A DNA stretch of 64,000 nucleotides, taken from positions 62,001 through 126,000 of the IMG/VR virus record IMGVR_UViG_3300007513_000001; one strand, 5' to 3'. A program made the position numbers and the translations under genes. This document shows, in pieces, positions 1 through 46,258 of the stretch (the first letter of the stretch is position 1; each line of letters starts with the position of its first letter). The notes under the pieces were generated by a model that was not told the origin of the DNA, searched no databases, and was given only the letters and a program-made list of their open reading frames with translations.

Positions 1-1
1 A

Positions 2-1384
2 ATTCTGCAAGATCAATACATTAAAGACTATTCTGCAGCCAAGGGCTTGATGGAGACAATTAAGTCATCTGCAAATTATTCATGCCGTCACCTCCGCGGG
101 AGTTCGTGTGCAGAAGGTTTGAGAGCACTTAAGGCTGCTGATAAAAAATCTCAGTTTTTTAAAACTTGTGCTTTCCGGTGCACATATAAAAAAGCAAAAG
201 AAAAATTTGTTGGAAGCAGTTATGGAATTACTAATTTTTCTTATTTTTTAGCAGAGACTCAATATGTCGGAAAAATTAAACCGCACCAACTCTTAGTTGT
301 CGATGAAGCTCATAATTCAGAATTAGAATTAAGTAAATTTATTGAAATTGGAATCTCTAAAAGATTTTGTGTTAGAGTGCTTAAGCTTACAATGCCAGAT
401 TTTTCTAGCCAAAAACAAGCTATAAACTGGGTAGAGCAAGTTTATGAACCAAGGTTGTCTTCGCACGTAAAGCATATCGAAAATATGCTAGAGAAATATG
501 TTGGATTAAAAGAAAAGATTAAAGAATTTGCTAATATAGCTAATAAATTTGAGATGTTAGATAAACATGCATGCAAACTTAGAAGATTTCTATCTCACTA
601 CTCTGAAGAAAATTGGGTCTTTAATTACGAAAAAGAGGGAGACAGCGCAAGACTAGAGTTTAAACCTGTGGATATATCTAAGTTTGCTCAAGAATATCTT
701 CTCAAATATGGCAAACAAGTTTTGATGATGTCTGCAACAATATTAAATAAAGATGCATTCTGCGAGCTGATGGGGATAAAAAAAGAAGAAGCTGCTTTTA
801 TTTCTATTCCATCTCCATTCCCAAAAGACAATCGCCCTATTATAGTCAGCCCTATTGGAAAAATGAGTTCGTCTTCTATTGATCAAACTCTGCCAAAGTT
901 GGCCATTGCTATCAAAGAAATTATTGATAACCATGAAGATGAAAAGGGGATTATTCATTGCCACTCTTACAAAATAGCAAATTATTTGAAAAAAAATATT
1001 AAATCTAACAGGTTTTTAATTCACGATTCTTCAAATAGGGATATGATTCTTGAAAAACATATGAAATCAAAAAAACCAACCATACTACTAAGCCCATCTA
1101 TGACGGAAGGAGTAGATTTAAAAGGCGATATGAGTAGATTCCAAATTTTGTGTAAGGTGCCTTATCCGTATCTTGGAGATAAGCTAATCAAAAAGAAAAT
1201 GAATAAATGGAATTGGTGGTATCCAATGCAAACAGCTAAGACTATAGTTCAATCTGTTGGTAGAAGCATAAGAAATAAAGAAGATTATGCCGCAACTTAT
1301 ATCTTAGATTCGGATTGGAATTATTTTTATAAAAGAAATTCTGCATACTTACCTACAGATTTTTCTTCTTGCATTCTTCAATAG
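2..1384 (+). CDS. DinG/Rad3-family SF2 helicase, 5'-truncated by the window edge
   Basis: The frame is open from base 2 (ILQDQY, motif Ia-like), so the track start at 47 is not the true start. Motifs: LLVVDEAH (II), MSAT (III), SMTEGVDLKG (V), QSVGRSIR (VI), plus a Cys cluster that could bind Fe-S. Confidence 0.9.
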   Translation: MLQDQYIKDYSAAKGLMETIKSSANYSCRHLRGSSCAEGLRALKAADKKSQFFKTCAFRCTYKKAKEKFVGSSYGITNFSYFLAETQYVGKIKPHQLLVVDEAHNSELELSKFIEIGISKRFCVRVLKLTMPDFSSQKQAINWVEQVYEPRLSSHVKHIENMLEKYVGLKEKIKEFANIANKFEMLDKHACKLRRFLSHYSEENWVFNYEKEGDSARLEFKPVDISKFAQEYLLKYGKQVLMMSATILNKDAFCELMGIKKEEAAFISIPSPFPKDNRPIIVSPIGKMSSSSIDQTLPKLAIAIKEIIDNHEDEKGIIHCHSYKIANYLKKNIKSNRFLIHDSSNRDMILEKHMKSKKPTILLSPSMTEGVDLKGDMSRFQILCKVPYPYLGDKLIKKKMNKWNWWYPMQTAKTIVQSVGRSIRNKEDYAATYILDSDWNYFYKRNSAYLPTDFSSCILQ

Positions 1385-1393
1385 GACATAACG

Positions 1394-1930
1394 ATGCCAG
1401 GCTTAGTTTACAAAAATATACACGAGCTCAAGAAAGAGTTAGATAACTGGGGATATTCTATCTTTACAATATCTGGTGGTTTTGATCCTATTCACGTGGG
1501 TCATATTAGATATATAACTTCCGCAGCAGAGGCTGCTCAAGTAGGATCTCCCGATACTGGTTTCTGGAACCCGGGGGTGTTGGTGGTTATTGTTAATAGC
1601 GATGGTTTTCTAAAGAGAAAGAAAGGATATTCGTTTATGCCCTTAGAAGAAAGAATGGAAATAATCTCCTCTATTGAAGGCGTCGATTTTGTTACTTGCT
1701 GGGATGATGGCACTCAAACAGTAATAGGCGCATTAGAAATACTGAAACCTCAATTCTTTTTAAAGGGCGGCGACAGATGCGATCCAGAGAGTGTACCAGA
1801 ATTCTCGACATGCGATAAAATTGGTTGCGAAGTGCTTTTTGACATAGGGGGAAAAGAAAAGGTTCAAAGCTCTTCAGAGCTGGTGCGGCAATATGAAAAC
1901 ATTAGACTCAAAAAAGATAAAAAGAAATAA
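1394..1930 (+). CDS. Cytidylyltransferase-like nucleotidyltransferase (TagD/RibL/RfaE-II superfamily)
   Basis: SGGFDPIHVGH (HxGH) motif, KGGDR, and a C-terminal SSSEL(V) motif. Confidence 0.85.
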   Translation: MPGLVYKNIHELKKELDNWGYSIFTISGGFDPIHVGHIRYITSAAEAAQVGSPDTGFWNPGVLVVIVNSDGFLKRKKGYSFMPLEERMEIISSIEGVDFVTCWDDGTQTVIGALEILKPQFFLKGGDRCDPESVPEFSTCDKIGCEVLFDIGGKEKVQSSSELVRQYENIRLKKDKKK

Positions 1931-2507
1931 AAAAACGACTGATATTCTAAGAGAATATATTAGATTCATACAAGAAGATGTAGGAGGAATCGACTCTGTT
2001 AATATTCTTTCACAATACGCGCATAGAGACCAAAAAAGAAGAACTGGAGAACCCTATTTTTTACACCCGCAAGAAGTTTCTAACATAGTAAAAAAATATT
2101 ACCCGGGAAATAAAGTAGCTTATTATTCTGCGCTTCTCCATGATTCAATGGAGGATGGATTAGATTTAGGCAACTTTGAAGATGAAGATGAGCTAATAGC
2201 TTTTATACTAGACGCGATATCGGATGATAAGGTTTCTAGTAGAGTAATAGAAGTGGTAAGCTTACTCACTAAAAGAAAAAATGCCCCCTATGATTTTTAT
2301 ATACGTGGTATAATGAATGATCCAGACGCAGTAATTGTTAAGCTCGCTGATATGCTCCACAACCTTTCTGATAACCCGTCGCCCAGGCAAATAGTCAAAT
2401 ATGGAAAAGCTGTTAGGGATATATCAGATTCTTCTCAGGGCCCACCGACGTTTGTTAATAGGTCGCACTGGAATGCTCTACTAAAATTAACGCAAACAGA
2501 AAAGTAG
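1893..2507 (+). CDS. Stand-alone RelA/SpoT-type HD hydrolase (small alarmone hydrolase, Mesh1-like)
   Basis: AHRDQKRRTGEPYFLHP, LLHDSMED and VKLADMLHN motifs; no synthetase domain; exact start uncertain. Confidence 0.85.
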   Translation: MKTLDSKKIKRNKKTTDILREYIRFIQEDVGGIDSVNILSQYAHRDQKRRTGEPYFLHPQEVSNIVKKYYPGNKVAYYSALLHDSMEDGLDLGNFEDEDELIAFILDAISDDKVSSRVIEVVSLLTKRKNAPYDFYIRGIMNDPDAVIVKLADMLHNLSDNPSPRQIVKYGKAVRDISDSSQGPPTFVNRSHWNALLKLTQTEK

Positions 2508-2555
2508 AATGCTAATTTAGTTTATTTCTAATCTAAAATTAACATAATTAGAAAT

Positions 2556-3737
2556 ATGTCGATATTCAAGCACCATAAATCCTCTGGCGATAGATCAGCT
2601 TCAGATCGCTCTCGTCATAAAGGAAAAATAGAGAAAGCTATAAAAGAAGGCATCCACCACATTGTTGCTGAAGAAAGCATCATTGGCCAGGATGGAAAAA
2701 AGAAATTTAAGATTCCTGTTAGAGGGATAAAAGAATATCGCTTTGTATATGGAAAAAACTCTAGTAAAAAAGTTGGAGCTGCGCCTGGAAAAAATATTAG
2801 AAAAGGTCAAACAATAGGAAAAAAAGATTCCAGCGACCAAGGACCCGGGCAGGGAAATAAGCCAGGAAATGAAAAGGGCGAAGAATACTATGAGGTAGAA
2901 ATAACTCTAGAAGAATTAGCTTCTTACTTGTTTGATAATCTTGAGTTGCCAGAGCTTGAAAAGAAGCAAATGAAGAAAATTCTTTCTGAAAAACCAAAGC
3001 GACATGGATATCGAAACAAGGGGATCCGTCCGCGGCTAGACAAAAAAGAAACAGTAAAAAGAATGCTTCGAAGAAAAAATATGTCTAAAAGGCATAAAGA
3101 AATCGAAGAAGAAGATGATTTTTCTTTTAACCAAAGAGACTTAAGATATAAACACATTAAAAAGAAGTTTAATCAGCATTCAAATGCAGTGATATTCTTT
3201 GTAATGGATATTTCAGGGTCGATGACGGAAAACAAAAAATATTTAGCTAGAAGCTTTTTCTTTCTTTTATATCATTTTGTAAGATCTAAATACGAAAATA
3301 CAGAATTAGTTTTTATTGCCCACGATTCGCAAGCTTATGAAGTGAGCGAAGACCAATTTTTTAAAAGAGGGTCTTCTGGAGGAACTATAGTTTCTTCTTC
3401 TACAGAGATGGTTTTAGACATTGTCAGCAAAAGGTACCACCCAAGCAGCTGGAATATCTACTTGTTCCAGTGTAGCGACGGAGACAACTGGCCGTCAGAC
3501 AATGAGAAATTAGCTGACCATATAATAAAATTAATACCGATGGTTCAGCTTTACGGATATTGCGAAATAGTGCCATCTGACGACAGGCTTAGATGGGCTG
3601 ATGATAGCAAAGGATTGGGGGCTATGGTGTTTAAGCCGTTGAGTGGTTTTAATCTAAAAGTTGCAGATATTAGTTCTCCCGAAGATATTTGGCCTGCTTT
3701 TAAATCATTTTTCGGAGGTAGGAGTTTAGATGTCTGA
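2556..3737 (+). CDS. yeaH: YeaH/YhbH (DUF444) family VWA-domain protein
   Basis: N-terminal DRSASDRSRH, Gly-rich linker, MIDAS-like MDISGSM...GGT...SDGDN. Confidence 0.9.
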   Translation: MSIFKHHKSSGDRSASDRSRHKGKIEKAIKEGIHHIVAEESIIGQDGKKKFKIPVRGIKEYRFVYGKNSSKKVGAAPGKNIRKGQTIGKKDSSDQGPGQGNKPGNEKGEEYYEVEITLEELASYLFDNLELPELEKKQMKKILSEKPKRHGYRNKGIRPRLDKKETVKRMLRRKNMSKRHKEIEEEDDFSFNQRDLRYKHIKKKFNQHSNAVIFFVMDISGSMTENKKYLARSFFFLLYHFVRSKYENTELVFIAHDSQAYEVSEDQFFKRGSSGGTIVSSSTEMVLDIVSKRYHPSSWNIYLFQCSDGDNWPSDNEKLADHIIKLIPMVQLYGYCEIVPSDDRLRWADDSKGLGAMVFKPLSGFNLKVADISSPEDIWPAFKSFFGGRSLDV

Positions 3738-5043
3738 TTGGAGTCTTAAAGATTTAGAATTCTGGGATGAAAAGATATGCAAAATTGCAGAAGAGTGTAA
3801 TTTAGACTGGTATCCTATCACTTATGAAACATGCGACTACTATGAGATGATAGGGCACATGTCATATCACGGCATGCCATCGCATTATAACCATTGGTCT
3901 TTTGGCAAAAGTTTCGAAAGAACTCATCAAATGTATAATCTTGGTATGGAAGGCTTGCCCTATGAATTGATTATTAATTCAAATCCTTCTATATCTTATC
4001 TCATGAGAGAAAACCCTCTATATTTACAAATTCTTATAATGGCACACTGCGTAGGGCATTCAGATTTCTTTAAAAATAATAGAACTTTTGAGCTTACACA
4101 TGCAGACACTATTGTTTCTTCTTTAAGGAACGCCAAAAAGAGAATTCAGTCTTATATTGAAGATCCCAGCATTGGAATAGAAGAAGTAGAAAAAATAATA
4201 GATGCGGCTCACACCCTGCAGTTTCAAACCTACAGATATCCAAAAGAATATATTTCCAATAAAAAGAAAAAAGAAGAGCTAAAACTTTATTTAAAATCTC
4301 AGAGCGAAGCAGGAAAAGATGTAGATTTTTCTGTTTTAGACAACACACCTCTCGAACCCGAATATGATATATTGGGCTTTTTATTAGAATATTCTGACTC
4401 TCTAGAAGAGTGGGAAAGAGATATATTAGAAATAGTTAAAGTAGAATCTAATTACTTTTTACCACAAATTAAAACTAAAATTATGAATGAGGGATGGGCT
4501 TCTTATTGGCATTATACTATTCTTCATAAATTAGATTTACCGCAAAAATATCATTTGCCATTTCTAAAAAGCCACAACCAAGTTATTAAGCCTCATATAG
4601 GTGCTATTAATCCTTATCATTTGGGGTTTGAAATATTTAGAAGAATTGAAGAACGCGATGGAATTGAAGAATGTTTTTTAGCTAGAGAAATTCATCACGA
4701 TGAATCTTTCATTCGCCAATATCTAACTGAGGAAGATTGTCGAGATTTAAATTTATTTTCTTATGCTAATTTTGGGGATAAAATTAAAATAACTGATGTT
4801 TCTGATAAAGAAAGTTGGAAAATAGTGAGAGATGATTTAATTAAAAGAACGGGAACCAACAACATACCAGTAATTTATGTTGATTCAATAGACTTAGGGA
4901 ACATGTTAGTTTTACATCACGAACACGACGGAAGAGATCTAGAAATAGACCATGCAGAAAAAGTAGTGGATCATATAACTACGCTCTGGAAAAATCCAGT
5001 TAAATTATTAACAATCATTGAAGATGAACCATTTGAAATTTAG
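3730..5043 (+). CDS. spoVR: SpoVR/YcgB family protein
   Basis: GMPSHYNHWSFGK, YELIINSNP, MAHCVGHSDFFKNN, KIMNEGWASYWH; 8-nt overlap with yeaH. Confidence 0.92.
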   Translation: MSDWSLKDLEFWDEKICKIAEECNLDWYPITYETCDYYEMIGHMSYHGMPSHYNHWSFGKSFERTHQMYNLGMEGLPYELIINSNPSISYLMRENPLYLQILIMAHCVGHSDFFKNNRTFELTHADTIVSSLRNAKKRIQSYIEDPSIGIEEVEKIIDAAHTLQFQTYRYPKEYISNKKKKEELKLYLKSQSEAGKDVDFSVLDNTPLEPEYDILGFLLEYSDSLEEWERDILEIVKVESNYFLPQIKTKIMNEGWASYWHYTILHKLDLPQKYHLPFLKSHNQVIKPHIGAINPYHLGFEIFRRIEERDGIEECFLAREIHHDESFIRQYLTEEDCRDLNLFSYANFGDKIKITDVSDKESWKIVRDDLIKRTGTNNIPVIYVDSIDLGNMLVLHHEHDGRDLEIDHAEKVVDHITTLWKNPVKLLTIIEDEPFEI

Positions 5044-5051
5044 AGGGGAAC

Positions 5052-6992
5052 ATGCCAAAAAAGAAAACAGAAGACTTTCTTAAAATAATAGAAAATCAGA
5101 GAAATACAAAAAAAGAAGAACGTTTCAATGGAACTTTTTTAGAATATCTAGAAGAAGTTCAGAACAATCCCTCTATAGCGGATCACGCTCATAAAAAACT
5201 TTATGACACTATTGCTAATTTTGGATTCGAGGTTTTATCTGATGAAGATCCTCGAAAACGAAAAATATTTGATGGTGAAAATATAAAGATTTATGATTAT
5301 TTCAAGAGCGAATTTTTTGGTATGGAGCAAGTTCTTTCTAGATTAATGAGATTTTTAAAAGCTGCTTCTCTCAAGGGAGAAGAAAGTAGACAAGTATTGC
5401 TCTTGATGGGTCCAGTTGGAGCTGGTAAATCTGCTCTAGTTGAACATATAAAAAGAGCTATGGAGCATGCTCCAAATTATTACCACTTAGCGGGAGATCC
5501 TCAAAGAGGAGAACCGCTTCAACTAGTGCCAAGAGCGCTTAGGGAACAATTTGAAAGCATGATCGGTGTAAAAATCGAAGGCGACATCAGTCCCGTGGCA
5601 AGATATAAGCTCTTAGAAGAACATGGCGGTAAGTACGAACAGTTCCCCATAGTACAATCATCGTATTCTCAAAGGGGTCGCCGCGGGATTGCTGTCGTTC
5701 CTCCAATGGATGCTAACAGTCAAGACGTTTCGGTCTTAATAGGCTCAGAAGATATATCTAAGCTAGACAAATATTCAGAAGACGACCCCCGGATTTTATC
5801 GCTCAACGGTGCATTCAACGTTGGAAATAGAGGCATTGTTGAACTTGTTGAAGTCTTTAAGAATGAGATCGAATTTCTTCACACTATTATTACAGCGACC
5901 CAGGAAAAAAGAGTTCCGTCTCCAGGGAAGCATGACATGGTGTTTTTTGACGGTGTTATTTTAGCACACTGTAACGAAGCAGAGTGGAATAGATTCAGAT
6001 CAGAGCATACTAACGAAGCTATTCTAGATAGAATTGTTAAAATTAATGTACCGTATGTTTTAGAGCTGAATAAAGAAATAAAGATTTACGAGAAAATATT
6101 GGGAAGATCAGACTTTAAAGCACATATAGCGCCCCACACTATTAAGATAGCTTCTATGTTTTCAATCATGTCGAGATTAAAAAGTTCTCAAAAATGTGAT
6201 CTTCTTACGAAGATGAAAATTTACAATGGCGAAGAAGTAATTGAAAAAGGAAGAGTCAAAAAGATTGATATTAGAGACTTAAGAGAAGAATCTAGAGGGG
6301 AGGGTATGAAAGGAATTTCTACTCGATTCATCATGAAATGCATTGATGCAGCGCTTACCGATTCTGATTCTGGGTACATTACTCCTATTTCCGTTATGGA
6401 ATCAATTAAAAAGCAAGTTAACGAACAGCTAATTGACGAAGATTTTAGAGAAAGATGTCAAGAAATTATTGGCGGAATTGTTAGAGAAGAATACCTTAAA
6501 ATTCTTGAAAACGAAATAGCCAAAGCGTTCGTCACCGCCTATGAAGAACAAGCTCAAGCTTTATTTGATACGTATCTTGATAATGCTGAAGCTCATACAA
6601 CTCATGCTAGGATCAAGGACAAGATCACTAAAGAAGAACGCGAGCCAGATGAGAAGTATATGAGAGCGATCGAAGAGCAAATTGGGATTACTGGATCTTC
6701 AAGAGACGGATTTCGATCTGACGTAACCGCTTATATGTTTGCTAAAATGAGAAGAGGCGAAAAAGTCAACTATACTTCTTATGAGCCACTAAAAGAAGCA
6801 ATTGAAAGTTATTTAGTTGGATCTGTTAAAGATATGGCGCGAATCGTTACTAAGTCAAAAACTCGTGATGACGACCAAAAGAAAAAATATAGTGACATGG
6901 TTCAAACTATGGTCGATGAATATGGATATTCCCCAGATTCTGCCGAAGAAGTTTTAACTTACGCCAGTAATAATCTTTGGCGAGATAGTTAA
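5052..6992 (+). CDS. prkA: PrkA/YeaG family AAA+ ATPase (annotated Ser kinase)
   Basis: FFGME, Walker A GPVGAGKS, RGIVELVEVFK, NEAILDRI, VPYVL, GMKGISTRF; 646 aa is typical of the family. Confidence 0.92.
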   Translation: MPKKKTEDFLKIIENQRNTKKEERFNGTFLEYLEEVQNNPSIADHAHKKLYDTIANFGFEVLSDEDPRKRKIFDGENIKIYDYFKSEFFGMEQVLSRLMRFLKAASLKGEESRQVLLLMGPVGAGKSALVEHIKRAMEHAPNYYHLAGDPQRGEPLQLVPRALREQFESMIGVKIEGDISPVARYKLLEEHGGKYEQFPIVQSSYSQRGRRGIAVVPPMDANSQDVSVLIGSEDISKLDKYSEDDPRILSLNGAFNVGNRGIVELVEVFKNEIEFLHTIITATQEKRVPSPGKHDMVFFDGVILAHCNEAEWNRFRSEHTNEAILDRIVKINVPYVLELNKEIKIYEKILGRSDFKAHIAPHTIKIASMFSIMSRLKSSQKCDLLTKMKIYNGEEVIEKGRVKKIDIRDLREESRGEGMKGISTRFIMKCIDAALTDSDSGYITPISVMESIKKQVNEQLIDEDFRERCQEIIGGIVREEYLKILENEIAKAFVTAYEEQAQALFDTYLDNAEAHTTHARIKDKITKEEREPDEKYMRAIEEQIGITGSSRDGFRSDVTAYMFAKMRRGEKVNYTSYEPLKEAIESYLVGSVKDMARIVTKSKTRDDDQKKKYSDMVQTMVDEYGYSPDSAEEVLTYASNNLWRDS

Positions 6993-7024
6993 TGTACAAT
7001 TAGCTTCTATTTATTATTTTTTTA

Positions 7025-7312
7025 ATGGAGGCTTATATGAATAATAAAGTAGTTTTTGGCATGCCAGAAGTTCTAGTGGCTGGATCTTTTTTGCTTTTAG
7101 TTTCTGGCTTAACTTGGCAGGGGTGGTCTATTTTTGTGCTCGGTATGTTTGGAGCATTTATGAGATTTAGCTTAGAAATACAGAAAGCAAAAGTAGCTGA
7201 AGAAAAACAAAAAGAAGTAGTTGATAAAGTTGAAAACTTTGGAAAAACAGTTGCAGAACTAGCTGCATTTGGTCAGGTGTTTGGAAGCAAGAATGACGGT
7301 AAACTTCACTAA
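7025..7312 (+). CDS. Small membrane protein
   Basis: Two hydrophobic segments followed by a charged C-terminal half. Confidence 0.6.
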   Translation: MEAYMNNKVVFGMPEVLVAGSFLLLVSGLTWQGWSIFVLGMFGAFMRFSLEIQKAKVAEEKQKEVVDKVENFGKTVAELAAFGQVFGSKNDGKLH

Positions 7313-8645
7313 TTTTTATAGAGTTGAAGACACTGAATCTTTTTTAATTAAATCTAAACCTACGATCAAGAATTTTGCTAGAAATTTTAAAAAGTTGTCT
7401 AGTGGAAAAATAGAATTTTTTCTTAAAGATACGGTTGTTAAAGCTTCTTGGATAGACGGACTTAGATTAATATTAGAGTGCTTCGAAGAAGATAACAAGA
7501 TCATTAGAGATATTGTAGCAGAAGGTTTTATCTCAGTAGAAAAAATGCATCCGGGATCGGGATATTTTTATTTAATCGCTTTTCTACAGGGGCTAATGTA
7601 TAATTCTAACGATTGCTATTATGAAGAAATCCACTCTATTTCTAAACTTGCGAAAAGAGCAGATCTTTCTGAGCTTAAAGCTAGCATCAACTTAAATGAA
7701 GACGAATTCATAAAAAGCTTCGTAGATTTTATTATCAATCAAGCTGGTTTTAATTGCTCTTTTTCTTTAAAAGAAACACCGCAGTTTAATTCTAGGTTTA
7801 TTGTTTCTTCTTCGTATGATTTTCCAATAGCAGCACCCGTTGAATTTCTTCACGGAATCAATGTTTCAAATATTTCTATTTTTGATTCTAAAGCTATTGT
7901 TTACGATGGAGTAATAGAAAGTGTGGGAGAAATTCATCATGTTTTAAGCTATTTTTCTGAAAATAAATTAGATTTAATATTAGTTGCAAGAGGGTTTTCA
8001 GATGATGTAATCAATACTTTGGCTGTAAATTATAATAGAAAATCTCTAAGAGTCATTCCTGCGAGACTACTTTTTTCACTAGAGAGCATAAACTCTCTTA
8101 AAGATTTTTCCGTTGCAGCAGACGCAGAATTTGTAGATTCAACAAGCGGAAAATCCATATCTAGTTTAGATTTTAAAGAATTAAGATCTATTCACCACAT
8201 AGAAATCGACCACTTAAAATGTGCCATGCGAAACTCTAGAACTTCTAGTCGCGTTTTATCTTTAGTCTTTCAAATAAACAAAAAAATAGAAGCGACTGAT
8301 ATAGAAGAAAAAAAGGAAATTCTTCGAAAAAGAGTGGCTTCATTAAATGGGAGAAAAACAACAATTTATTTAGGGCAGCATTTAAGAAACGCAAAAGGAA
8401 TAACTAGAGACAGAATACTTTCTACTATCGGTATTTTAAACACAATAAGCCGGCATGGAATACTTAATTTAAAAGAAATAGAAGGAGAGAATTTGATTAA
8501 TCTTCGGAGTATTGTTAACTTTCTGACGGATTCTAATATGGAATTAGTCCCTGCAGCGTGTTTTATTCATGGCACCCTGAATGGTTTTAAGACAGCAAAC
8601 CAAGTAAAAAATGGAAGTTATATGCTTTTGCTGGATAATCAATGA
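7269..8645 (+). CDS. Divergent GroEL/Cpn60-like protein (apical domain recognisable, ATP motif degenerate); likely start at ATG 7293
   Basis: [17 protein letters not shown]...[19 protein letters not shown] resembles GroEL ILLADKKIS...[40 protein letters not shown] resembles ERVAKLAGGVAVIKVG; no GDGTTT. Confidence 0.7.
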   Translation: [458 protein letters not shown]

Positions 8646-9124
8646 TAACCCCTCGAGACTCAAAGTGGTTTTGTGGAGGTGGAAAACCGGCTGCTTTTTG
8701 TCAAATATTAGATGAAATTATAAATTCAGACCCTTCAGCAGAAATATATGTTGGAACGGATTCAGATCCCAGTAGAAAAAAAGTTGCTTTCGTAACTGGT
8801 GTTGTAATAAGATATCCGGGCAATGGTGCAAACTATTATTGGTCTCGAAGATATATAGAGTCAAATAAATTTTTTAATTTAGGGCATCGGCTAGAGCTAG
8901 AAGTAGCGGACTCAATTGTAGTTGCAACTGTGCTAAGAAAAGAAACTGGAAGAGATAAAATAATAATTCATGCGGACTGTAGTAGCGATCCTAGAAATGC
9001 TAGTTTTGAATTCCTAAACAGGATCACTAGTTATTCTAGAGCTATGGGTTTCACTACTGTGGCTAAGCCTGATAGTTGGGCTGCCAGCTCTGTAGCTGAC
9101 AAGCACGCAAAATCAATTAGCTGA
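8642..9124 (+). CDS. Ribonuclease H-like YkuK (DUF458) family protein
   Basis: IYVGTDS, RLELEV, IHAD, KPDSWAASSVADKH acidic motif pattern. Confidence 0.8.
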   Translation: MITPRDSKWFCGGGKPAAFCQILDEIINSDPSAEIYVGTDSDPSRKKVAFVTGVVIRYPGNGANYYWSRRYIESNKFFNLGHRLELEVADSIVVATVLRKETGRDKIIIHADCSSDPRNASFEFLNRITSYSRAMGFTTVAKPDSWAASSVADKHAKSIS

Positions 9125-9171
9125 TTTTACTTAGAGTCAAAATTGATTAGTTTGATCTATGGAGGTTTGTC

Positions 9172-9426
9172 ATGCCTAGAAGTAAGAAAACAACAATAAA
9201 ATCAACACCACAGCCGCCCCAAATAAAAGAAGGCGTTGTTGGAAGAATGACTAGAGACGTCATCGAGCTCCACGGTCAGTATTTAAAAGAAGAGCTAGTA
9301 GGTAATCCGGAAGCGTATAGTTTAAATCGCGACCAATTACAGAAAGTGTGCGAGTTAGTAGATGCTATTACTGTAAGAACTCAAGATAAAGCTTTAAGAC
9401 AAGTAGTCTCTATTTTTAAATCTTAG
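9172..9426 (+). CDS. Hypothetical protein
   Basis: GGAGG Shine-Dalgarno 5 nt before the ATG; tiles with its neighbours. Confidence 0.65.
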   Translation: MPRSKKTTIKSTPQPPQIKEGVVGRMTRDVIELHGQYLKEELVGNPEAYSLNRDQLQKVCELVDAITVRTQDKALRQVVSIFKS

Positions 9427-9435
9427 CGCAAAATT

Positions 9436-9897
9436 ATGCACGGAATAAGGCATCTAATAAATTGTCATTGCATTTTACCGCAATTTAAAAAATCTACAAA
9501 CCCCCTATTTCATAAATTTGTCGTCTTTTCAATAATAGACGACGACGATAATGTTGTACCGTCATATGCACAATGTAATAATTGTTCTATAGTTCATAAA
9601 ATTATAGACTTATGCAATTCTGAAATTGTAAAAGGTAAAGAGCAACTAGCAAGTTTGCCAACCATTACAGATATTAAGCTAGAATTCCCAGATTCCTTGT
9701 CTGAATTGTTAGTTTCTTATAAATCGGATATAACCATATGGCAACATGCTCAGTTTATTCTGAGGCATCAGAGGTGGGGAGAAAAAATAATAATTCAAAG
9801 AGAAGAAGATGAATCAAGTGTTCAGGGTAAAATACTAACTTTTGTTTCGCCTATTCAATTTAGAATGGAAAGTTTTCAAGAGGATAACGATGTCTAA
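9436..9897 (+). CDS. Hypothetical protein with a putative Zn-binding CxC...CxxC...C set
   Basis: HLINCHCILPQF, AQCNNC, DLC. Confidence 0.65.
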   Translation: MHGIRHLINCHCILPQFKKSTNPLFHKFVVFSIIDDDDNVVPSYAQCNNCSIVHKIIDLCNSEIVKGKEQLASLPTITDIKLEFPDSLSELLVSYKSDITIWQHAQFILRHQRWGEKIIIQREEDESSVQGKILTFVSPIQFRMESFQEDNDV

Positions 9898-10353: not shown

Positions 10354-10761
10354 GGGCCCGAAACGGCTTCGACGGGGTAGTAGAGAAAGAGAGTGCAGGT
10401 GGTCTCACGAAACAGGTGACCTTAAAATCGGTTTCAAAACTTTAATTGCCAATAACAATTATCACTTCGAAGCTGACCGCTTAGCGGCCTAATTCGCGGG
10501 GTTTCTTAAGACCTTGATACCCAACTTAAGATAACAGGTAGATCCCTGCGAAAACAAAAAATCACAATGGTTCCCTGGTACAAACTAGTACCACTTAGAG
10601 ATAAGTGAATACCTTTTGTAACAGGTGGATTTCCAAGGCTACATAGGAAAAGGGAACGTTTGTAGCTACCTTTCTAATTTGGGAATAAATTAGACAAACC
10701 TGTGAATGACTTGACTTTGAAGCTATTGCGGACGCGGGTTCGACTCCCGCCGGGTCCACCA
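10354..10761 (+). ncRNA. ssrA: tmRNA, 408 nt; tag ORF 10448-10492 encodes ANNNYHFEADRLAA*
   Basis: 5' GGGCCCG pairs with 3' CGGGTCC (10751-10757) including the G3-U alanine wobble; encoded ACCA end; T-arm GCGGG-TTCGACT-CCCGC (10734-10750); 5' TTCGACGGGG motif; internal ORF ending LAA-TAA. Confidence 0.96.
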
Positions 10762-11833: not shown

Positions 11834-13006
11834 GTGGCTTCTAGAACTAATAACCTGTTTGGAAGAGATATAAATAAGAAAAAAAAGAAAAAAAAGGATA
11901 CAATTATGACAACCGATCCCAAAGATCCAAATATTGAAGATTCTAACGATGATTACATCAATACACCAGATGCTGGGGACGATTTCGATTTTGTCATGGC
12001 TTATGATGATGATCCCGCAGAAGCCGATGAGCGACTTCTTCAAGATAACTTAGCGCGCAGCGCTATTTCTTGCGGTTTTATTGGAGTCGGTGGAGGCGGT
12101 GGAAAGCTGGCTAAAGCTTTTTTAGATTTAGGGTTTAATAAAACTCTTTTAGTCAACACCACTAAAAAAGATCAGCCTGGTGGATTAGACGAGAATAATT
12201 TTGTTTTAGTTCCGGGCGCTGACGGCGTGGGGAAAGATATAGATCTTGGTAAAAAGGTTCTTCAAGAAAACAGTGCATTTGTAGAAGACGCAGTACGTAC
12301 GAGATTGGGGCAGTTAGACTGGTTGTTTGTTTGTGCGGGCGGTGGTGGTGGCACGGGGAGTGCTTCTTACGAACTGCATGATTCTTTAACTCGATATCTA
12401 TCTTCGATCGAAGCCTCAGGAAAAGTGGTTTATATTGTTTCGAAACCAACGGCGCAAGAAATGCTTAATCCAACAATTTCAAAAAACTATAAATCTCTAG
12501 CAAGTGATATATCTGATACTCCTCACATTATTATTGATAATGAAAAGCAGCTCCAGCTCTTAAGAGGTAAAGTTGGAATGATGAACATGTTCCCTGCTGC
12601 AAATAAAAACTTTGCTAAATTAATAGCTCAAGTTCTTAAATTAGCAGACGAGCACACCGAAATACAAACGTTTGATTCTAAAGATTTAGAAAAATGTTTA
12701 AGTGCTAATGGAAGAATAGTAGTGGGTAGCACTGTAGTGCGAGACGTTAATAGAAATGATTTAGGATCTTTGGTCTACCAAGGGTGCTTAAGATCTTCTC
12801 CATGTCCCACTCCATCTGGTAACGCAAAAACAGGAACTCTTCTTTTGGTTGTAGATAATAATATGGCTTCGGACCCGGACGTAAGTCGTAGACTTGAATC
12901 TGCTTTTTCTTACGTCGGTGGTAGAGCTTCTACTTTATTCTCCGGTGTATATGTAAAAGAAGGAATTCCTGGACTTATAGCTATCACACTTCTTGGCGGA
13001 TTATAA
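11834..13006 (+). CDS. Tubulin/FtsZ-family GTPase (TubZ/PhuZ/CetZ-like); likely start at ATG 11906
   Basis: GFIGVGGGGGK (T1 loop), AGGGGGTGS signature, NEKQ, FDSKDL (T7-like); acidic N-terminal extension; ends at the core with no C-terminal tail. Confidence 0.9.
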   Translation: MASRTNNLFGRDINKKKKKKKDTIMTTDPKDPNIEDSNDDYINTPDAGDDFDFVMAYDDDPAEADERLLQDNLARSAISCGFIGVGGGGGKLAKAFLDLGFNKTLLVNTTKKDQPGGLDENNFVLVPGADGVGKDIDLGKKVLQENSAFVEDAVRTRLGQLDWLFVCAGGGGGTGSASYELHDSLTRYLSSIEASGKVVYIVSKPTAQEMLNPTISKNYKSLASDISDTPHIIIDNEKQLQLLRGKVGMMNMFPAANKNFAKLIAQVLKLADEHTEIQTFDSKDLEKCLSANGRIVVGSTVVRDVNRNDLGSLVYQGCLRSSPCPTPSGNAKTGTLLLVVDNNMASDPDVSRRLESAFSYVGGRASTLFSGVYVKEGIPGLIAITLLGGL

Positions 13007-13518: not shown

Positions 13519-14808
13519 ATGAACAATAGAAAAATGTTAGTAGTAGACACAAGCGTTCTACTTTATGATATGAAGTCTATTCATTCTTTTCCTGGTAATG
13601 ATGTTGTTATACCATTGATTGTGCTGGATGAATTAGATAGATTTAAAGAAAAGCCCGGGCTCTTGGGCGAATCTGCTAGATACATTAATCGATTCTTAGA
13701 TAACCTCAGAGAACACGGAAAGTTAGATCAAGGTATTACCATACCAGAGTTCGACCAGACCATCAGAGTAGCTCTGAAGACCCCCAGTTATGACATTCTG
13801 AACGATTGGGATCAAGACAAGGGAGATAACAGGATAATTTCTGTTGCTCTTGGTCTTAAGAACGAAAATCCAGATTTTCCAGTAAAGGTTATAACCAAAG
13901 ATATTAACCTTAGAGTAAAATGCGATGCGCTAGGAATACAGGCGGAAGATTATTTCGCAGATCATATCGATATTGAATCTGAGGGAGAGTATACTGGATG
14001 GAGAGAGATAGCTCTTATGCCAGAACAAATAGATAGATTTTATTCTTCTAATTTTGAAGCTCCCAAAGATTTAGCTTTAATAGAAAATGAATTTGTTGTT
14101 GCAAAATCTGGAAGTAGTTCTTTTATAGCCCAGCATAGAAATGGAAAGTTTAATAAATTAAATTGCAAAATTGAATCTATTTCTAAAATAGAACCAAAAA
14201 ATAAAGAGCAAAAATTTGCTATAGAGTCTTTATTACACGATGATATTCCACTAGTTACTTTAACTGGCTTAGCGGGTTCTGGAAAAACGTTTTTAACTTT
14301 AATGGCAGCACTAGAAGCTAAGAATCATGGGACTTACTCTAGAATTGTATTTACAAGGTCTATTCAAAGTGTCGGTAAAGATATGGGTTATTTGCCAGGA
14401 GACATTAAAGAAAAAATGGCTCCTTGGTTAGCTCCAATAGTAGATAACTTTAGACATGTATTTAAAGATGTGACTTATTTTGACATGATGATAGAAAGAG
14501 GCGAAATAGAAATAGCTCCGCTTTCTTACATTCGCGGAAGAACTTTTAACGATTGTTTCGTGATTGTCGATGAAGCTCAAAATGCTACTATTCATGAATT
14601 AAAAACTATCATAACTAGAATTGGCACAAATTCTAAAGTCGTTCTTCTTGGAGATACAGATCAAATAGACACTCCTTATATTGGAAAGAATTCTAACGGC
14701 TTAAGCATTGTAATCAGTAAATTTAAGAATAGCCCGCTACACTCGCATGTTCATTTAGCTAGAGGACAGAGGTCAGAACTTGCATCTGCAGCATCAAAAA
14801 TTCTGTGA
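13519..14808 (+). CDS. phoH: PIN-PhoH fusion (PhoH2/YlaK-like)
   Basis: PIN motifs VVDTSVLL, DNRII, TKDINLRVK; PhoH motifs GLAGSGKT, YIRGRTF, IVDEAQN, GDTDQID. Confidence 0.92.
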   Translation: MNNRKMLVVDTSVLLYDMKSIHSFPGNDVVIPLIVLDELDRFKEKPGLLGESARYINRFLDNLREHGKLDQGITIPEFDQTIRVALKTPSYDILNDWDQDKGDNRIISVALGLKNENPDFPVKVITKDINLRVKCDALGIQAEDYFADHIDIESEGEYTGWREIALMPEQIDRFYSSNFEAPKDLALIENEFVVAKSGSSSFIAQHRNGKFNKLNCKIESISKIEPKNKEQKFAIESLLHDDIPLVTLTGLAGSGKTFLTLMAALEAKNHGTYSRIVFTRSIQSVGKDMGYLPGDIKEKMAPWLAPIVDNFRHVFKDVTYFDMMIERGEIEIAPLSYIRGRTFNDCFVIVDEAQNATIHELKTIITRIGTNSKVVLLGDTDQIDTPYIGKNSNGLSIVISKFKNSPLHSHVHLARGQRSELASAASKIL

Positions 14809-44620: not shown

Positions 44621-46258
44621 ATGAAAATAGCGGGACTTTGGTCGGGTCACGACTGTTCTTTTTGCGTTTTAGAAGATGGGAAACCTTTAATTCACGCTGA
44701 ATATGAACGCTACAATAGAGAAAAATCCCCGCCGGGAGATTCTTCTAACTTTATGTTTGACAGGTATCCAGAGTGGCCTGCTATAACTCATTTTGCTTCT
44801 GTATATCCAAAGAAAAAACTAACGGAAAGAGAAGAATCTTATAGTTTATTAAAAAACCACATAGACGCCAATGGTGGAAAGCTATATTTTTGCTCACATC
44901 ATAAAGCTCACGCAGCAAACGCTTTTTATTCTAGTAATTTTGAGAAATCTATAATCGTCACTTTAGATGGTGGTGGTGTAGAAGACGACCGCGGTGGAGA
45001 GTCTGCATGTACGATCTGGAGGGGTGATGGAACAGAATTGAAGCATCTAAAGACCTTTCGGCCTAACGAGATTAATATCGGAGGTGTGTGGACACGAGTA
45101 ACAAGGTATGTATTTAAGCTTCAGAACGGGTGGCCAAGAGGAGGCCAAGAGGGTTCTGTAATGGCCATGGCTGCTTTTGGTGATGCATCTATCTGGGCTC
45201 AAGACTGCTGGAATTGGTTAACCAAAGACAAGATGTCTGCTGGGTTTAAGCCTCCAAACCAACCAGTTGGAGCAACTTCAGACCGTGATCCACCCCACCC
45301 TTATTTAGAACCGTGGGCCGCTCATGCTAGAGAGTCAGAGCAAAATAGATTTGATATAGCTGCTGGTTTGCAAGAAGCGACCGAAGCTCTTATAAGACAA
45401 ATAATAGAATATGCGCTAAGCTTTGATAGCGATATAGATTCAATTTGTTTAGCTGGTGGTGTCACTTTAAATTCTGTTGCCATGGGAAAATTATTGAAGT
45501 GGTTCCCGCAATTAAAGAGAGTCTATATACCCCCTGTACCTTATGACGGTGGATTGTGTATAGGAGCGGCACAGGCTCTGTGGCACGAAGAGCTTGGAAA
45601 TCCGAGAATTAAATGGGAGCATAATTTTACTCCATATTTAGGAGAAACTTGGACTGAAGAACATTTTAATGAAGTTTTAGAAAATAGAAAAAATGACATA
45701 GAAGTTTTAGAATCAAGCGTAGAAGATATAGTTTCAAAGCTTCAAGAGGGAAATATAGTGTCGGTATTCAACGGCTCGTCTGAATCTGGCCGGCGAGCTC
45801 TTGGAAATAGAAGCATATTAGTAGATCCAAGATCAACGACAATGAAAGATACTATCAATGAAAAGGTCAAGCATCGGCAATGGTATCGCCCTTTTGCTCC
45901 CTCTATATTAGAGTCTGAAGCCTCAGATTGGTTCGAAGAATATCAAGAGAGTCCGTACATGCAGTTTGTTTTAAAATTTAAAAAAGAAAAAGTTGATTTA
46001 GTACCAGCTGTGGTTCATTTAGATGGAACAGCAAGACTACAAACGGTTAGAGAGACTGATAATAAGTGGTACTATGATTTTTTGCAAGCTTGGCATAAGG
46101 CATCTGGAGTACCAATCATACTTAACACAAGCTTCAATGATAGAGAGCCCATTTGCGAAAATGTTGAGCATGCTCTAAACTGCTTTTTAGGAACCAACAT
46201 TGACTATCTTTATTTTCCAGAATATAAGAAGCTCATAAAACGAAAAGGTGCAGAGTAA
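44621..46258 (+). CDS. Carbamoyltransferase (NodU/CmcH family)
   Basis: GHD, HHKAHAANAF, TLDGGG, LAGGVTLNS, GRRALGNRSIL, KHRQWYRPFAP, LNTSFN. Confidence 0.93.
   Translation: MKIAGLWSGHDCSFCVLEDGKPLIHAEYERYNREKSPPGDSSNFMFDRYPEWPAITHFASVYPKKKLTEREESYSLLKNHIDANGGKLYFCSHHKAHAANAFYSSNFEKSIIVTLDGGGVEDDRGGESACTIWRGDGTELKHLKTFRPNEINIGGVWTRVTRYVFKLQNGWPRGGQEGSVMAMAAFGDASIWAQDCWNWLTKDKMSAGFKPPNQPVGATSDRDPPHPYLEPWAAHARESEQNRFDIAAGLQEATEALIRQIIEYALSFDSDIDSICLAGGVTLNSVAMGKLLKWFPQLKRVYIPPVPYDGGLCIGAAQALWHEELGNPRIKWEHNFTPYLGETWTEEHFNEVLENRKNDIEVLESSVEDIVSKLQEGNIVSVFNGSSESGRRALGNRSILVDPRSTTMKDTINEKVKHRQWYRPFAPSILESEASDWFEEYQESPYMQFVLKFKKEKVDLVPAVVHLDGTARLQTVRETDNKWYYDFLQAWHKASGVPIILNTSFNDREPICENVEHALNCFLGTNIDYLYFPEYKKLIKRKGAE

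What the first reader, a model, noticed from the sequence alone, without database searches (positions are those of the whole stretch)
2556..6992. Complete YeaH-SpoVR-YeaG(PrkA) trio carried by a probable jumbo phage
Seen: three tightly coupled genes (8-nt overlap, 8-nt gap) with intact family motifs: MIDAS in YeaH, the SpoVR signature, and Walker A in PrkA. They sit in the same co-oriented contig as baseplate genes. Established: in bacteria these three families co-occur and are linked to nitrogen starvation, stationary phase and sporulation. They resemble an AAA+/VWA chaperone system, and the mechanism is unresolved. The usual bacterial arrangement has prkA/yeaG before yeaH; here the ATPase comes last. 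Inference: the phage uses the complex to remodel or degrade host proteins, or to steer host dormancy during infection. This would be a phage dormancy-control system I cannot match to a characterised one.
Basis: partly seen in the sequence, partly recalled or inferred. Interest (0 to 1): 0.8.

Follow-up and report, generated by a model that had tools for sequence, protein, structure and literature searches.

The report
Starvation-proteolysis gene trio in marine jumbo phage
A complete 293-kb marine T4-like phage carries intact copies of three bacterial genes (yeaH, spoVR, prkA) that bacteria use together during starvation, most likely to break down host proteins and feed virus production; other phages have them too, but nobody has studied them there.

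Summary
Window 2556-6992 encodes YeaH/YhbH (DUF444), SpoVR/YcgB and PrkA/YeaG at E 1e-110 to 1e-137, with an 8-nt overlap and an 8-nt gap. Walker A/B, the MIDAS motif and the SpoVR signature blocks are all intact. The host record is a complete 293,409-bp virus with T4-type capsid, portal, terminase and baseplate genes.

The trio is not unique to this phage. It is kept in the same rotated order (ATPase last) in about 80 related marine viral contigs under strong purifying selection (dN/dS 0.04-0.14). It also occurs in Thermus phages (deposited since 2006), Ralstonia phage RsoM2USA and huge metagenomic phages. Trees of all three proteins agree on capture as a block and at least four independent captures by large phages. 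PHROGs already has families for all three, but I found no paper that treats them as a phage system.

Function is inferred. A 2026 paper shows that E. coli YeaG drives bulk starvation-induced proteolysis that fuels new protein synthesis. My best reading is that the phage uses the module to recycle host proteins.

A new lead: an AlphaFold model of SpoVR (pLDDT 94) matches only zincin metallopeptidase folds, though without the catalytic Glu of HExxH. Verdict: a new member of a known kind, of moderate interest.

The parts
2508..2555 (+). 48-nt AT-rich spacer upstream of yeaH; possible promoter or translation-start region of the trio
   Evidence: Read directly from the sequence. The sigma-70 consensus scan found nothing above the shuffle expectation. 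Function not shown.
2556..3737 (+). yeaH/yhbH homologue, 393 aa: DUF444 protein with a VWA-type MIDAS metal site
   Evidence: PF04285 E 6e-110. Best NCBIfam match is sporulation protein YhbH, 388.8 bits over the full length but below the equivalog cut-off. phrog_19072 E 6e-100. D218, S220, S222, T277 and D308 are invariant in 45 sequences.
3730..5043 (+). spoVR/ycgB homologue, 437 aa: N-domain (1-345) with a predicted zincin-like fold, plus the small SpoVR_C domain. Start overlaps the yeaH stop by 8 nt; GGAGG lies 12 nt upstream of the ATG
5052..6992 (+). prkA/yeaG homologue, 646 aa: AAA+ ATPase domain plus PrkA C-terminal (kinase-like) domain. GAGGGG lies 5 nt upstream of the ATG, 8 nt after the spoVR stop
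   Evidence: PF08298 E 5e-137 and PF06798 E 7e-79. PDB 9xip 'Serine protein kinase' E 6e-84 over residues 24-640. Walker A K126 corresponds to E. coli K116; K429 corresponds to E. coli K426. Invariant AAA+ core residues.
7269..8645 (+). Divergent viral GroEL-family chaperonin-like protein, 458 aa. Possibly associated: it follows prkA in 58 of 80 related loci
   Evidence: Seven NCBIfam GroEL models, E 1e-12 to 9e-5. ESM Atlas structural match TM 0.78 to a viral Cpn60 cluster. Synteny. No Pfam hit. A functional link to the trio is inference only.

Best explanation
The three genes are a complete, functional PrkA-YeaH-SpoVR module. An ancestor of a cosmopolitan clade of roughly 270-305 kb marine T4-superfamily phages captured it as a block from a bacterium with a Firmicute-type prkA-yhbH-spoVR operon. 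The order was rotated so that the ATPase comes last, and the module has been inherited vertically since.

Shown: intact domains and catalytic motifs, translationally coupled arrangement, strong purifying selection, monophyly, and congruent trees for all three proteins.

Inferred: during infection the three proteins assemble into an ATP-driven protein-remodelling or degradation machine. PrkA would be the AAA+ hexameric motor, YeaH a VWA/MIDAS adaptor, and SpoVR a metal-dependent zincin-like partner that may supply the peptidase. The machine would turn over host cytoplasmic proteins largely nonspecifically, as E. coli YeaG/SpdA does in starvation-induced protein degradation. That would free amino acids and energy for phage protein synthesis in nutrient-poor, slow-growing marine hosts. 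In effect the phage switches on a starvation self-digestion programme on its own schedule, independent of host RpoS/NtrC control.
For: Families and motifs.
Phage identity.
Conservation: same order in 77 of 80 related viral loci, the rest being cut by contig ends. ORFs intact and far better conserved than their flanks: PrkA median 72% identity against 26-60% for neighbours. dN/dS medians are 0.137, 0.040 and 0.049. PrkA is at least as conserved as TerL on the same contigs: 78% vs 71%, and 90% vs 87%.
Repeated capture: congruent PrkA, SpoVR and YeaH trees give at least four independent phage captures, which argues for a general benefit to large phages.
Published function: yeaG, yeaH and ycgB are mutually cofit in six bacteria (10.1101/072470). 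YeaG is required for bulk, largely nonspecific degradation of cytoplasmic proteins that supplies amino acids and ATP for new synthesis (PMC13684143). B. subtilis PrkA shows Walker-A-dependent casein degradation (PMC9512850).
SpoVR fold: zincin-like.
Neighbourhood: proteostasis and starvation themes, with a GroEL-like gene, a tmRNA, a RelA/SpoT-type HD hydrolase and PhoH2.
Against: There is no functional data for any phage copy.
Whether PrkA itself is a protease is disputed: purified B. anthracis PrkA had no protease activity (PMC13001217).
SpoVR lacks the catalytic Glu of HExxH (its motif is H-C/V-x-G-H). Foldseek found no PDB match and hhalign against DUF885 gave 0.7% probability, so the peptidase role is a lead only.
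E. coli YeaG R232, which is needed for function, is Ser in the marine clade.
The host is unknown, so it is unknown whether it has its own trio.
RNA evidence is only three or four short contigs.
The neighbouring starvation genes are variable: the HD hydrolase accompanies the trio in only 4 of 80 loci.
Confidence: 0.45

Rival explanations
1. Host-state signalling, the first reader's 'dormancy control'. The trio acts as a kinase or signalling pathway that pushes the infected cell into, or holds it out of, a stationary-phase-like or persister-like state, for example to keep a starving host metabolically competent or to delay lysis. It would not act as a bulk degradation machine.
For: Price et al. 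proposed a conserved signalling pathway on the basis of cofitness. E. coli yeaG mutants change metabolic heterogeneity, lag time and toxin-antitoxin expression under N starvation (PMC4664914). K429, the counterpart of the required C-domain K426, is conserved. A RelA/SpoT-type (p)ppGpp-hydrolase-like gene lies directly upstream in this genome.
Against: Kinase activity could not be demonstrated for B. subtilis PrkA or B. anthracis PrkA. The lag and viability phenotypes are now explained by proteolysis. The HD hydrolase is next to the trio in only 4 of 80 related loci.
Confidence: 0.2
2. A chaperone or assembly factor directed at phage proteins. Like MoxR-VWA pairs, the AAA+/VWA/metal-binding trio would remodel or mature phage proteins or large phage assemblies (very large capsid, metal cofactor insertion), working alongside the adjacent GroEL-like chaperonin.
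For: The AAA+ plus VWA-MIDAS pairing resembles MoxR-type chaperone systems (established knowledge). A GroEL-family gene follows prkA in 58 of 80 loci. All carriers are large phages of 69-642 kb. Purified PrkA lacked protease activity in one study.
Against: The cellular trio works in bacteria with no phage and has starvation phenotypes. The trio sits about 100 kb from the structural module. The Thermus phages with the trio are only 69-178 kb, so an unusually large capsid is not required.
Confidence: 0.15
3. Targeted counter-defence or host takeover. The module would degrade or inactivate a small set of specific host proteins (defence systems, regulators, competing proteases) rather than the bulk proteome.
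For: Phages often carry dedicated takeover factors. A VWA/MIDAS adaptor could confer client specificity. B. subtilis PrkA affects specific regulators, though indirectly.
Against: There is no match to defence or anti-defence families in PADLOC beyond a weak P-loop hit. The very high conservation of all three proteins across a diverse clade and four independent captures fits a generic biochemical role better than an arms-race factor. YeaG-dependent degradation is reported as largely nonspecific.
Confidence: 0.1
4. Artefact: the trio is cellular DNA joined to a phage contig by misassembly or binning, or a decaying passenger with no function.
For: One deposited 'phage' example is such an artefact. 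Enterobacter phage LAU1 has YeaG/YeaH at 98/93% identity to E. coli at the very edge of the record.
Against: For this window: a complete virus record; the same gene string in about 80 viral contigs up to 298 kb; an uninterrupted 4.7-kb exact contig across the region in a DNA run, and presence in samples from two studies; GC identical to the rest of the genome; monophyletic phage clade; dN/dS well below 1.
Confidence: 0.01

Closest known systems
Bacterial PrkA/YeaG - YhbH/YeaH - SpoVR/YcgB stress operon (E. coli yeaGH + ycgB; B. subtilis prkA-yhbH + spoVR; single operon in most bacteria)
   Same: The same three families with full-length domain architecture and all conserved motifs. Closest cellular copies are Clostridia/Bacillota and a mixed Gram-negative group at 52-58% (PrkA), 41-46% (YeaH) and 41-49% (SpoVR) identity.
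   Different: Carried by a virus. Gene order is rotated to YeaH-SpoVR-PrkA, against PrkA-YeaH-SpoVR in 54 of 56 cellular loci. It scores below NCBIfam equivalog cut-offs. E. coli R232 is replaced by Ser. It is presumably expressed from phage promoters rather than RpoS/NtrC promoters (inference).
E. coli starvation-induced protein degradation (SPD) dependent on YeaG/SpdA (PMC13684143)
   Same: A homologous AAA+ protein with conserved Walker A Lys and C-domain Lys. The proposed role is the same: ATP-dependent bulk turnover of cytoplasmic proteins to fuel new synthesis.
   Different: Only about 31% identity to YeaG, because the phage copy is of the Firmicute PrkA subtype. No functional test exists for the phage copy. 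The paper itself does not address YeaH or YcgB.
Trio in Thermus phages phiYS40, TMA, YS40_Isch, MN1, Lalka, phiLo
   Same: Phage-borne, and in the same rotated order YeaH-SpoVR-PrkA. These phages are cultured and their host is tractable.
   Different: An independent capture: a separate clade in all three trees, about 29-32% identity, grouping with a Sulfobacillus locus. TMA and phiYS40 have an extra 616-aa ORF between spoVR and prkA. C-domain K426 is replaced by Asp. The genomes are 69-178 kb, so not jumbo.
Trio in Ralstonia jumbo phage RsoM2USA and huge metagenomic phages LR756502, LR745206 and LR756511
   Same: Large phages (344-642 kb) carrying the trio. RsoM2USA and LR745206 have all three genes adjacent, and LR756511 does too.
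   Different: They keep the bacterial order PrkA-YeaH-SpoVR. RsoM2USA, LR756502 and LR745206 are of the proteobacterial YeaG type (59-65% to E. coli), and LR756511 is of a Myxococcota/Planctomycetota type. The RsoM2USA paper lists the genes only in a table.
Zincin (gluzincin) metallopeptidases: M1 aminopeptidases/LTA4H, thermolysin M4, M32, M3, DUF885
   Same: The predicted fold of SpoVR residues 1-345: a beta-sheet, then a helix bearing H106-x3-H110, then a later NEGWA block that resembles the NEGFA/EGWA third-ligand motif of M1 and DUF885 (the M1 motif is from my own knowledge).
   Different: No Glu follows the first His. About 140 residues separate HxxxH from NEGWA. There is no significant Foldseek or hhalign similarity. 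Peptidase activity has never been shown for any SpoVR.
MoxR-type AAA+ / VWA-MIDAS chaperone pairs, and Lon-type AAA+ proteases
   Same: An AAA+ ATPase encoded next to a VWA-MIDAS protein. The PrkA P-loop region gives weak matches to the Lon AAA+ module.
   Different: PrkA is a distinct AAA+ family with its own C-terminal domain. The Lon similarity covers only residues 84-140, and no Lon protease domain was detected.

Membership tests
PrkA/YeaG family | N-terminal AAA_PrkA domain plus PrkA C-terminal domain, full length | tested here: met
   PF08298 residues 28-383 (profile 2-358 of 358) E 5e-137; PF06798 residues 385-637 (1-255 of 255) E 7e-79. PDB 9xip E 6e-84.
PrkA/YeaG family | Walker A lysine required for ATP binding and function (B. 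subtilis K108, E. coli K116), plus the rest of the AAA+ catalytic core | tested here: met
   K126 aligns with E. coli K116. G120, P121, G123, K126, S127, E264, E267, N308, D326 and R327 are invariant across E. coli and phage copies. Naming these as Walker B, sensor and Arg finger is my reading of the alignment.
PrkA/YeaG family | E. coli residues R232 and K426, shown to be needed for complementation | tested here: inconclusive
   K426 corresponds to K429 and is kept. R232 corresponds to S236 and is not kept in the marine clade.
PrkA/YeaG family | ATPase activity; ATP-dependent proteolysis or kinase activity | not testable with these tools
   Biochemistry is needed. The published data conflict.
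YeaH/YhbH (DUF444) | DUF444 domain with a complete VWA MIDAS motif (DxSxS...T...D) | tested here: met
   PF04285 E 6e-110. D218, S220, S222, T277 and D308 are invariant in 45 sequences. TIGR02877 YhbH 388.8 bits, below the equivalog cut-off of 468.
SpoVR/YcgB | SpoVR N-domain plus SpoVR_C domain with the family's invariant His/Glu/Asn blocks | tested here: met
   PF04293 E 9e-123 and PF24755 E 6e-8. Invariant residues. AFDB and Atlas structural matches to SpoVR clusters, TM 0.8-0.93.
PrkA-YeaH-SpoVR operon | The three genes adjacent and co-oriented | tested here: met
   8-nt overlap and 8-nt gap on one strand. SD-like motifs at both internal junctions.
PrkA-YeaH-SpoVR operon | Canonical order prkA > yeaH > spoVR | tested here: not met
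   The order here is yeaH > spoVR > prkA. The canonical order holds in 54 of 56 cellular loci. The rotated order is shared by 77 of 80 marine viral loci and by the Thermus phages.
Starvation-induced protein degradation (SpdA/YeaG-dependent) | Bulk degradation of cytoplasmic proteins that depends on the gene; induction by RpoS or starvation | not testable with these tools
   Defined physiologically in E. coli. Only homology is shown here.
Zincin/gluzincin metallopeptidase (for SpoVR) | Zincin catalytic-domain fold | tested here: inconclusive
Zincin/gluzincin metallopeptidase (for SpoVR) | HExxH motif with catalytic Glu | tested here: not met
   The motif is A-H106-C-V-G-H110 (family consensus AHVxGH). 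Both His are invariant, but the residue after the first His is Cys or Val.
Jumbo phage (tailed phage over 200 kb) | Genome over 200 kb with virion hallmark genes | tested here: met
   293,409 bp, terminal repeat, CheckV 100%. gp23-family genes in two copies, T4 portal and TerL. Baseplate wedge.
Anti-phage defence systems (PADLOC) | Match to a known defence protein family | tested here: not met
   YeaH and SpoVR have no hit. PrkA gives only a 22-bit P-loop match to DolB.

The most novel reading that the evidence does not exclude
SpoVR/YcgB is the missing hydrolase of the PrkA system: a divergent zincin-like metalloenzyme, with H106/H110 plus E254 or E154 binding the metal. The trio would then be a previously unrecognised three-part AAA+ unfoldase / VWA adaptor / metallopeptidase machine. 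Large phages have captured it at least four times to impose an autophagy-like self-digestion of the host proteome that pays for virion synthesis in starved cells. This would settle the dispute over whether PrkA is a protease, and would define a new class of phage auxiliary function, namely host-proteome recycling.
Probability: 0.25. Interest if true: 0.85.

Novelty: new member of a known kind. Interest (0 to 1): 0.55.

Why it matters
The PrkA/YeaG-YeaH-SpoVR trio is one of the most widespread bacterial stress modules whose mechanism is still unresolved. Only in late 2026 was YeaG tied to bulk starvation proteolysis.

Large phages have taken the whole module at least four separate times, and one cosmopolitan marine jumbo-phage clade preserves it more strictly than its terminase. 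That suggests the module does something generically useful for a virus in a nutrient-limited cell. If so, it would be a new type of auxiliary gene: one that recycles the host's own proteome rather than boosting photosynthesis or nutrient uptake. That has consequences for how viral production is sustained in oligotrophic oceans.

The phage copies are compact and always encode all three partners side by side. This makes them good material for reconstituting the complex and for testing whether SpoVR is the hydrolase. The cultured Thermus and Ralstonia phages offer immediate genetic tests.

Tried and rejected
1. DNA-level search of the trio against 50,697 deposited phages found no match. Relatives are visible only at the protein level.
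2. Sigma-70 promoter and intrinsic terminator scans over 1-9500 found nothing above the shuffle expectation. The T4 late-promoter motif TATAAATA is absent near the trio. Transcription units remain undefined.
3. Expression: metatranscriptome runs hold only 156-190 nt exact contigs inside prkA and one just downstream. That is too little to claim transcription, and DNA carry-over is not excluded.
4. 'Core gene' test using TerL-selected large contigs: one positive. The four negatives are uninformative, because in each the trio would lie beyond the contig end.
5. I suspected the 95-aa ORF before the GroEL-like gene was a GroES. I rejected this: it has no family hit and its predicted shape is that of a small membrane protein.
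6. SpoVR against PDB by sequence, as a single sequence and as a 65-sequence profile: nothing.
7. SpoVR against PDB by Foldseek, full length and N-domain: nothing significant.
8. hhalign of the SpoVR profile against three Sorangium DUF885 paralogues: 0.7% probability.
9. I could not measure distances within the putative metal site, because model coordinates are not exposed to scripts.
10. Enterobacter phage LAU1 was rejected as a phage precedent: its genes are host flank.
11. Ten literature searches found no paper that treats the trio as a phage system.

Full report
**1. Observation**

The window has three + strand ORFs at 2556-3737 (393 aa), 3730-5043 (437 aa) and 5052-6992 (646 aa).

Pfam assigns them as follows:
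- DUF444/YeaH, E 6e-110.
- SpoVR, E 9e-123, plus SpoVR_C.
- AAA_PrkA, E 5e-137, plus the PrkA C-terminal domain, E 7e-79.

NCBIfam gives the same families but below the equivalog cut-offs. YeaH scores best against the Firmicute sporulation protein YhbH.

- PrkA has GPVGAGKS. G120, P121, G123, K126, S127, E264, E267, N308, D326 and R327 are invariant in an alignment with E. coli YeaG and five other phage copies.
- YeaH has the complete MIDAS set D218, S220, S222, T277 and D308, invariant in 45 phage and cellular sequences.
- SpoVR has AHCVGHSDFF and NEGWASYWH. H106, H110, E154, N253, E254 and D324 are invariant in 65 sequences.
- SD-like GGAGG and GAGGGG motifs precede the two internal start codons, which fits translational coupling.

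**2. It is a phage, and complete**

- The window is positions 62,001-126,000 of a 293,409-bp IMG/VR virus record with a terminal repeat, rated 100% complete. I found an exact 38-bp end repeat.
- The genome encodes two gp23-family capsid proteins, a T4-type portal and a large terminase. Within the window it encodes a baseplate wedge protein.
- The nearest cultured phages are Flavobacterium phage vB_FspM_immuto and Microcystis phage Mel-JY01, at only 37-47% identity for TerL and the capsid. This makes it a deep-branching T4-superfamily myovirus with an unknown host.
- GC content is flat at about 0.35 across the trio and its surroundings.
- The same DNA occurs in marine metagenome runs from two studies, and a DNA run holds an exact 4.7-kb contig spanning 1935-6651.
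- The chimera, cellular-chromosome and pseudogene objections are therefore refuted.

**3. How common it is and how it evolves**

- The 120 best protein-database matches to PrkA are all 74-93% identical. They come from marine metagenomes, and several sit on contigs of 260-306 kb.
- A scan of IMG/VR found 175 relatives. Of the 80 loci fetched, 77 show YeaH>SpoVR>PrkA, and the other three are cut by contig ends.
- Full-length ORFs are present in 75 of 76 (YeaH), 77 of 79 (SpoVR) and 79 of 79 (PrkA) loci.
- Median identities are 57%, 60% and 72% respectively. Flanking genes are patchy and reach only 26-60%.
- Pairwise dN/dS (NG86, pairs with dS 0.05-1.5) has medians of 0.137, 0.040 and 0.049.
- Where PrkA and TerL lie on the same contig, PrkA is the more conserved: 78% vs 71%, and 90% vs 87%.
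- A test of core-gene status using terminase-selected contigs gave one informative positive and four uninformative fragments.

**4. Origin**

- A scan of one genome per prokaryotic species found the closest cellular PrkA proteins at 52-58% identity. They are in Clostridia/Bacillota and in a mixed set of Gram-negative lineages. E. coli YeaG is only 31% identical.
- YeaH (41-46%) and SpoVR (41-49%) point to the same loci.
- In trees of PrkA, SpoVR and YeaH, the marine phage sequences form one clade with SH-aLRT 99-100. It sits beside the Bacillota group and the mixed Gram-negative group. These are quick LG+G4 trees, so deep branch order should be read with care.
- A 306-kb contig filed as 'Methylococcaceae bacterium TMED69' falls inside the phage clade and is evidently a misbinned phage.
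- Among cellular loci containing all three genes, 54 of 56 are ordered PrkA>YeaH>SpoVR. The rotated order is therefore a real derived feature.

**5. Precedent in phages**

- tblastn against deposited phages finds PrkA in 17 records.
- Thermus phages TMA/phiYS40, MN1 and phiLo have YeaH-SpoVR-PrkA. TMA has an extra ORF inserted.
- Ralstonia jumbo phage RsoM2USA and huge phages LR745206 and LR756511 have PrkA-YeaH-SpoVR.
- In the trees these fall in three further, separate positions: the Thermus phages with a Sulfobacillus locus, RsoM2USA with two huge phages among the YeaG-type sequences, and LR756511 with Myxococcota/Planctomycetota-type sequences. That implies at least four captures, each of them as a block.
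- Enterobacter phage LAU1 is a false example, since its genes are host flank.
- PHROGs has dedicated families for all three proteins, two labelled 'unknown function'.
- The only paper I found that mentions them in a phage lists them in a table. Ten literature searches found no treatment of the trio as a phage system.

**6. What the module does in bacteria**

- yeaG and yeaH mutants share N-starvation phenotypes. YeaG K116A, R232A and K426A are inactive (PMC4664914). The phage protein keeps K116 (as K126) and K426 (as K429) but has Ser at the R232 position.
- B. subtilis PrkA is an ATPase with slow, Walker-A-dependent casein degradation and no detectable kinase activity (PMC9512850).
- Stringently purified B. 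anthracis PrkA has no protease activity and is modelled as a clade-III AAA+ hexamer (PMC13001217).
- In October 2026, E. coli YeaG (renamed SpdA) was shown to be required for starvation-induced, largely nonspecific degradation of cytoplasmic proteins. That degradation supplies amino acids and ATP for stress-protein synthesis (PMC13684143).

**7. A new lead on SpoVR**

- SpoVR has no sequence relative in the PDB.
- AlphaFold2 with a 65-sequence alignment gives a confident model: pLDDT 94.2, pTM 0.91. Residues 1-345 alone give pLDDT 93.6.
- Foldseek finds no significant PDB match.
- Below the SpoVR family itself, the AlphaFold-cluster search lists only weak hits, and these too are zincin-like families: DA1, SprT-like, DUF2268 and DUF4157.
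- The model's topology fits a zincin. A beta-sheet is followed by helix 97-116 carrying H106-x3-H110, and later the invariant NEGWA block. That block resembles the NEGFA third-ligand motif of M1 enzymes (from my own knowledge) and the VEGWALYAE block I saw in DUF885.
- I therefore treat 'SpoVR has a zincin-like fold' as probable, at about 0.6. I treat 'SpoVR is the hydrolase of the system' as a hypothesis, at about 0.25-0.35.
- Some bacterial SpoVR genes carry LAGLIDADG inteins. Inteins usually sit in conserved catalytic cores, which fits an enzymatic role.

**8. Most likely mechanism**

Shown: the phage encodes an intact, co-translated, strongly constrained AAA+ / VWA-MIDAS / SpoVR set.

Inferred: the three proteins form a complex that uses ATP to unfold host cytoplasmic proteins and hand them on for degradation. 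This reproduces the YeaG-dependent starvation programme under phage control, freeing amino acids and energy for virion synthesis in oligotrophic hosts.

The neighbourhood fits a proteostasis and starvation theme but is variable:
- a RelA/SpoT-type HD hydrolase with intact motifs, directly upstream;
- a divergent GroEL-family protein downstream, present in 58 of 80 related loci;
- a full-length tmRNA with an ...LAA tag at 10354-10761;
- a PhoH2 helicase.

Rivals are host-state signalling, a chaperone for phage assembly, and targeted counter-defence. PADLOC gives no support for a defence relationship.

**9. Verdict**

It overstates uniqueness, because phage-borne trios have sat in databases since the phiYS40 genome.

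What this analysis adds:
- the scale and constraint of the marine clade;
- capture as a block, at least four separate times;
- the conserved rotated order;
- the link to the newly described starvation proteolysis;
- the zincin-like prediction for SpoVR.

I rate it a new member of a known kind, with interest 0.55.

Noticed in passing
window 10354-10761 (+): A full-length phage-encoded tmRNA (Rfam RF00023, 107 bits, E 1.5e-41; ARAGORN tag peptide ANNNYHFEADRLAA). It lies 3.4 kb downstream of prkA, and the tag ends in the canonical LAA degradation signal. It could help with host assignment and may tie into the proteolysis theme.
   Followed up: partly
window 1893-2507 (+): A 204-aa stand-alone RelA/SpoT-type HD hydrolase domain (TIGR00691 positions 5-120, E 1.3e-13; Pfam HD_4) with intact HRDQ...HP...LLHDSMED motifs, making it a candidate small alarmone ((p)ppGpp) hydrolase. 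It is directly upstream of the trio here, but in only 4 of 80 related loci.
   Followed up: partly
window 7269-8645 (+) and 7025-7312 (+): The 458-aa protein is a divergent, shortened viral GroEL-family chaperonin (NCBIfam GroEL models E 1e-12; Atlas TM 0.78 to a viral Cpn60 cluster; no Pfam hit). It follows prkA in 58 of 80 loci at only 21-32% identity. The preceding 95-aa ORF is not GroES-like and looks like a small membrane protein.
   Followed up: partly
window 11834-13006 (+) and 13519-14808 (+): An FtsZ/tubulin-like protein (TIGR00065 E 9e-8; Pfam Tubulin E 3e-5, below cut-off) in a T4-like rather than a nucleus-forming phage, and a PhoH2 RNA helicase (E 1e-82).
   Followed up: no
window ~20000-52500 (+): An unbroken run of about 30 co-oriented, tightly packed ORFs of 210-375 aa. 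It includes a NodU/CmcH-type carbamoyltransferase (44621-46258, phrog_1601 E 4e-106) and a weak glycosyltransferase match (20049-21986). It looks like a very large glycan or modification cluster, or an expanded paralogue family.
   Followed up: no
window 15424-19815 (+): A 1463-aa ORF in the only stretch of raised GC (0.41-0.43 against 0.35), with only a weak PHROG match (phrog_5906, unknown function).
   Followed up: no
L087 (NHDW01000006.1, 305,838 bp) and protein P0067: A contig filed as 'MAG: Methylococcaceae bacterium TMED69' carries the phage-type trio (PrkA 77%) in the phage order and nests inside the phage clade, so it is almost certainly a misbinned jumbo-phage genome. Another clade member is labelled 'archaeon' in NCBI.
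   Followed up: partly
L171 (MN688132.1, Enterobacter phage LAU1, positions 1-3308): The YeaG/YeaH genes annotated in this 30.8-kb 'phage' are 98% and 93% identical to E. coli K-12 and sit at the very start of the record. They are probably host flank from a prophage excision or prediction, not phage genes.
   Followed up: yes
L135 (Sulfobacillus benefaciens MAG, PXYT01000011.1): The only apparently cellular locus with the phage-like order YeaH>SpoVR>PrkA. It groups with the Thermus-phage clade in all three trees. It could be the donor lineage, a prophage or a long-branch artefact.
   Followed up: no
G000:C1:176269-178167 and 178261-180150 (outside the window; L172): Two adjacent gp23-family capsid paralogues of 632 and 629 aa. 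Each matches the Pfam Gp23 model in two pieces (positions 4-66 and 115-356), which suggests a large insertion relative to T4 gp23.
   Followed up: no
AFDB cluster A0A535QG73; ESM Atlas SpoVR cluster of 907 aa: Some bacterial SpoVR proteins carry LAGLIDADG/DOD homing-endonuclease (intein-type) insertions, which usually mark conserved catalytic cores of enzymes.
   Followed up: no
whole genome G000: Strong strand asymmetry: 261 ORFs of at least 100 aa on the + strand against 65 on the - strand, with GC skew positive across the entire window. The terminal repeat is only 38 bp, as expected from an assembly overlap of a circularly permuted genome rather than a true long DTR.
   Followed up: partly
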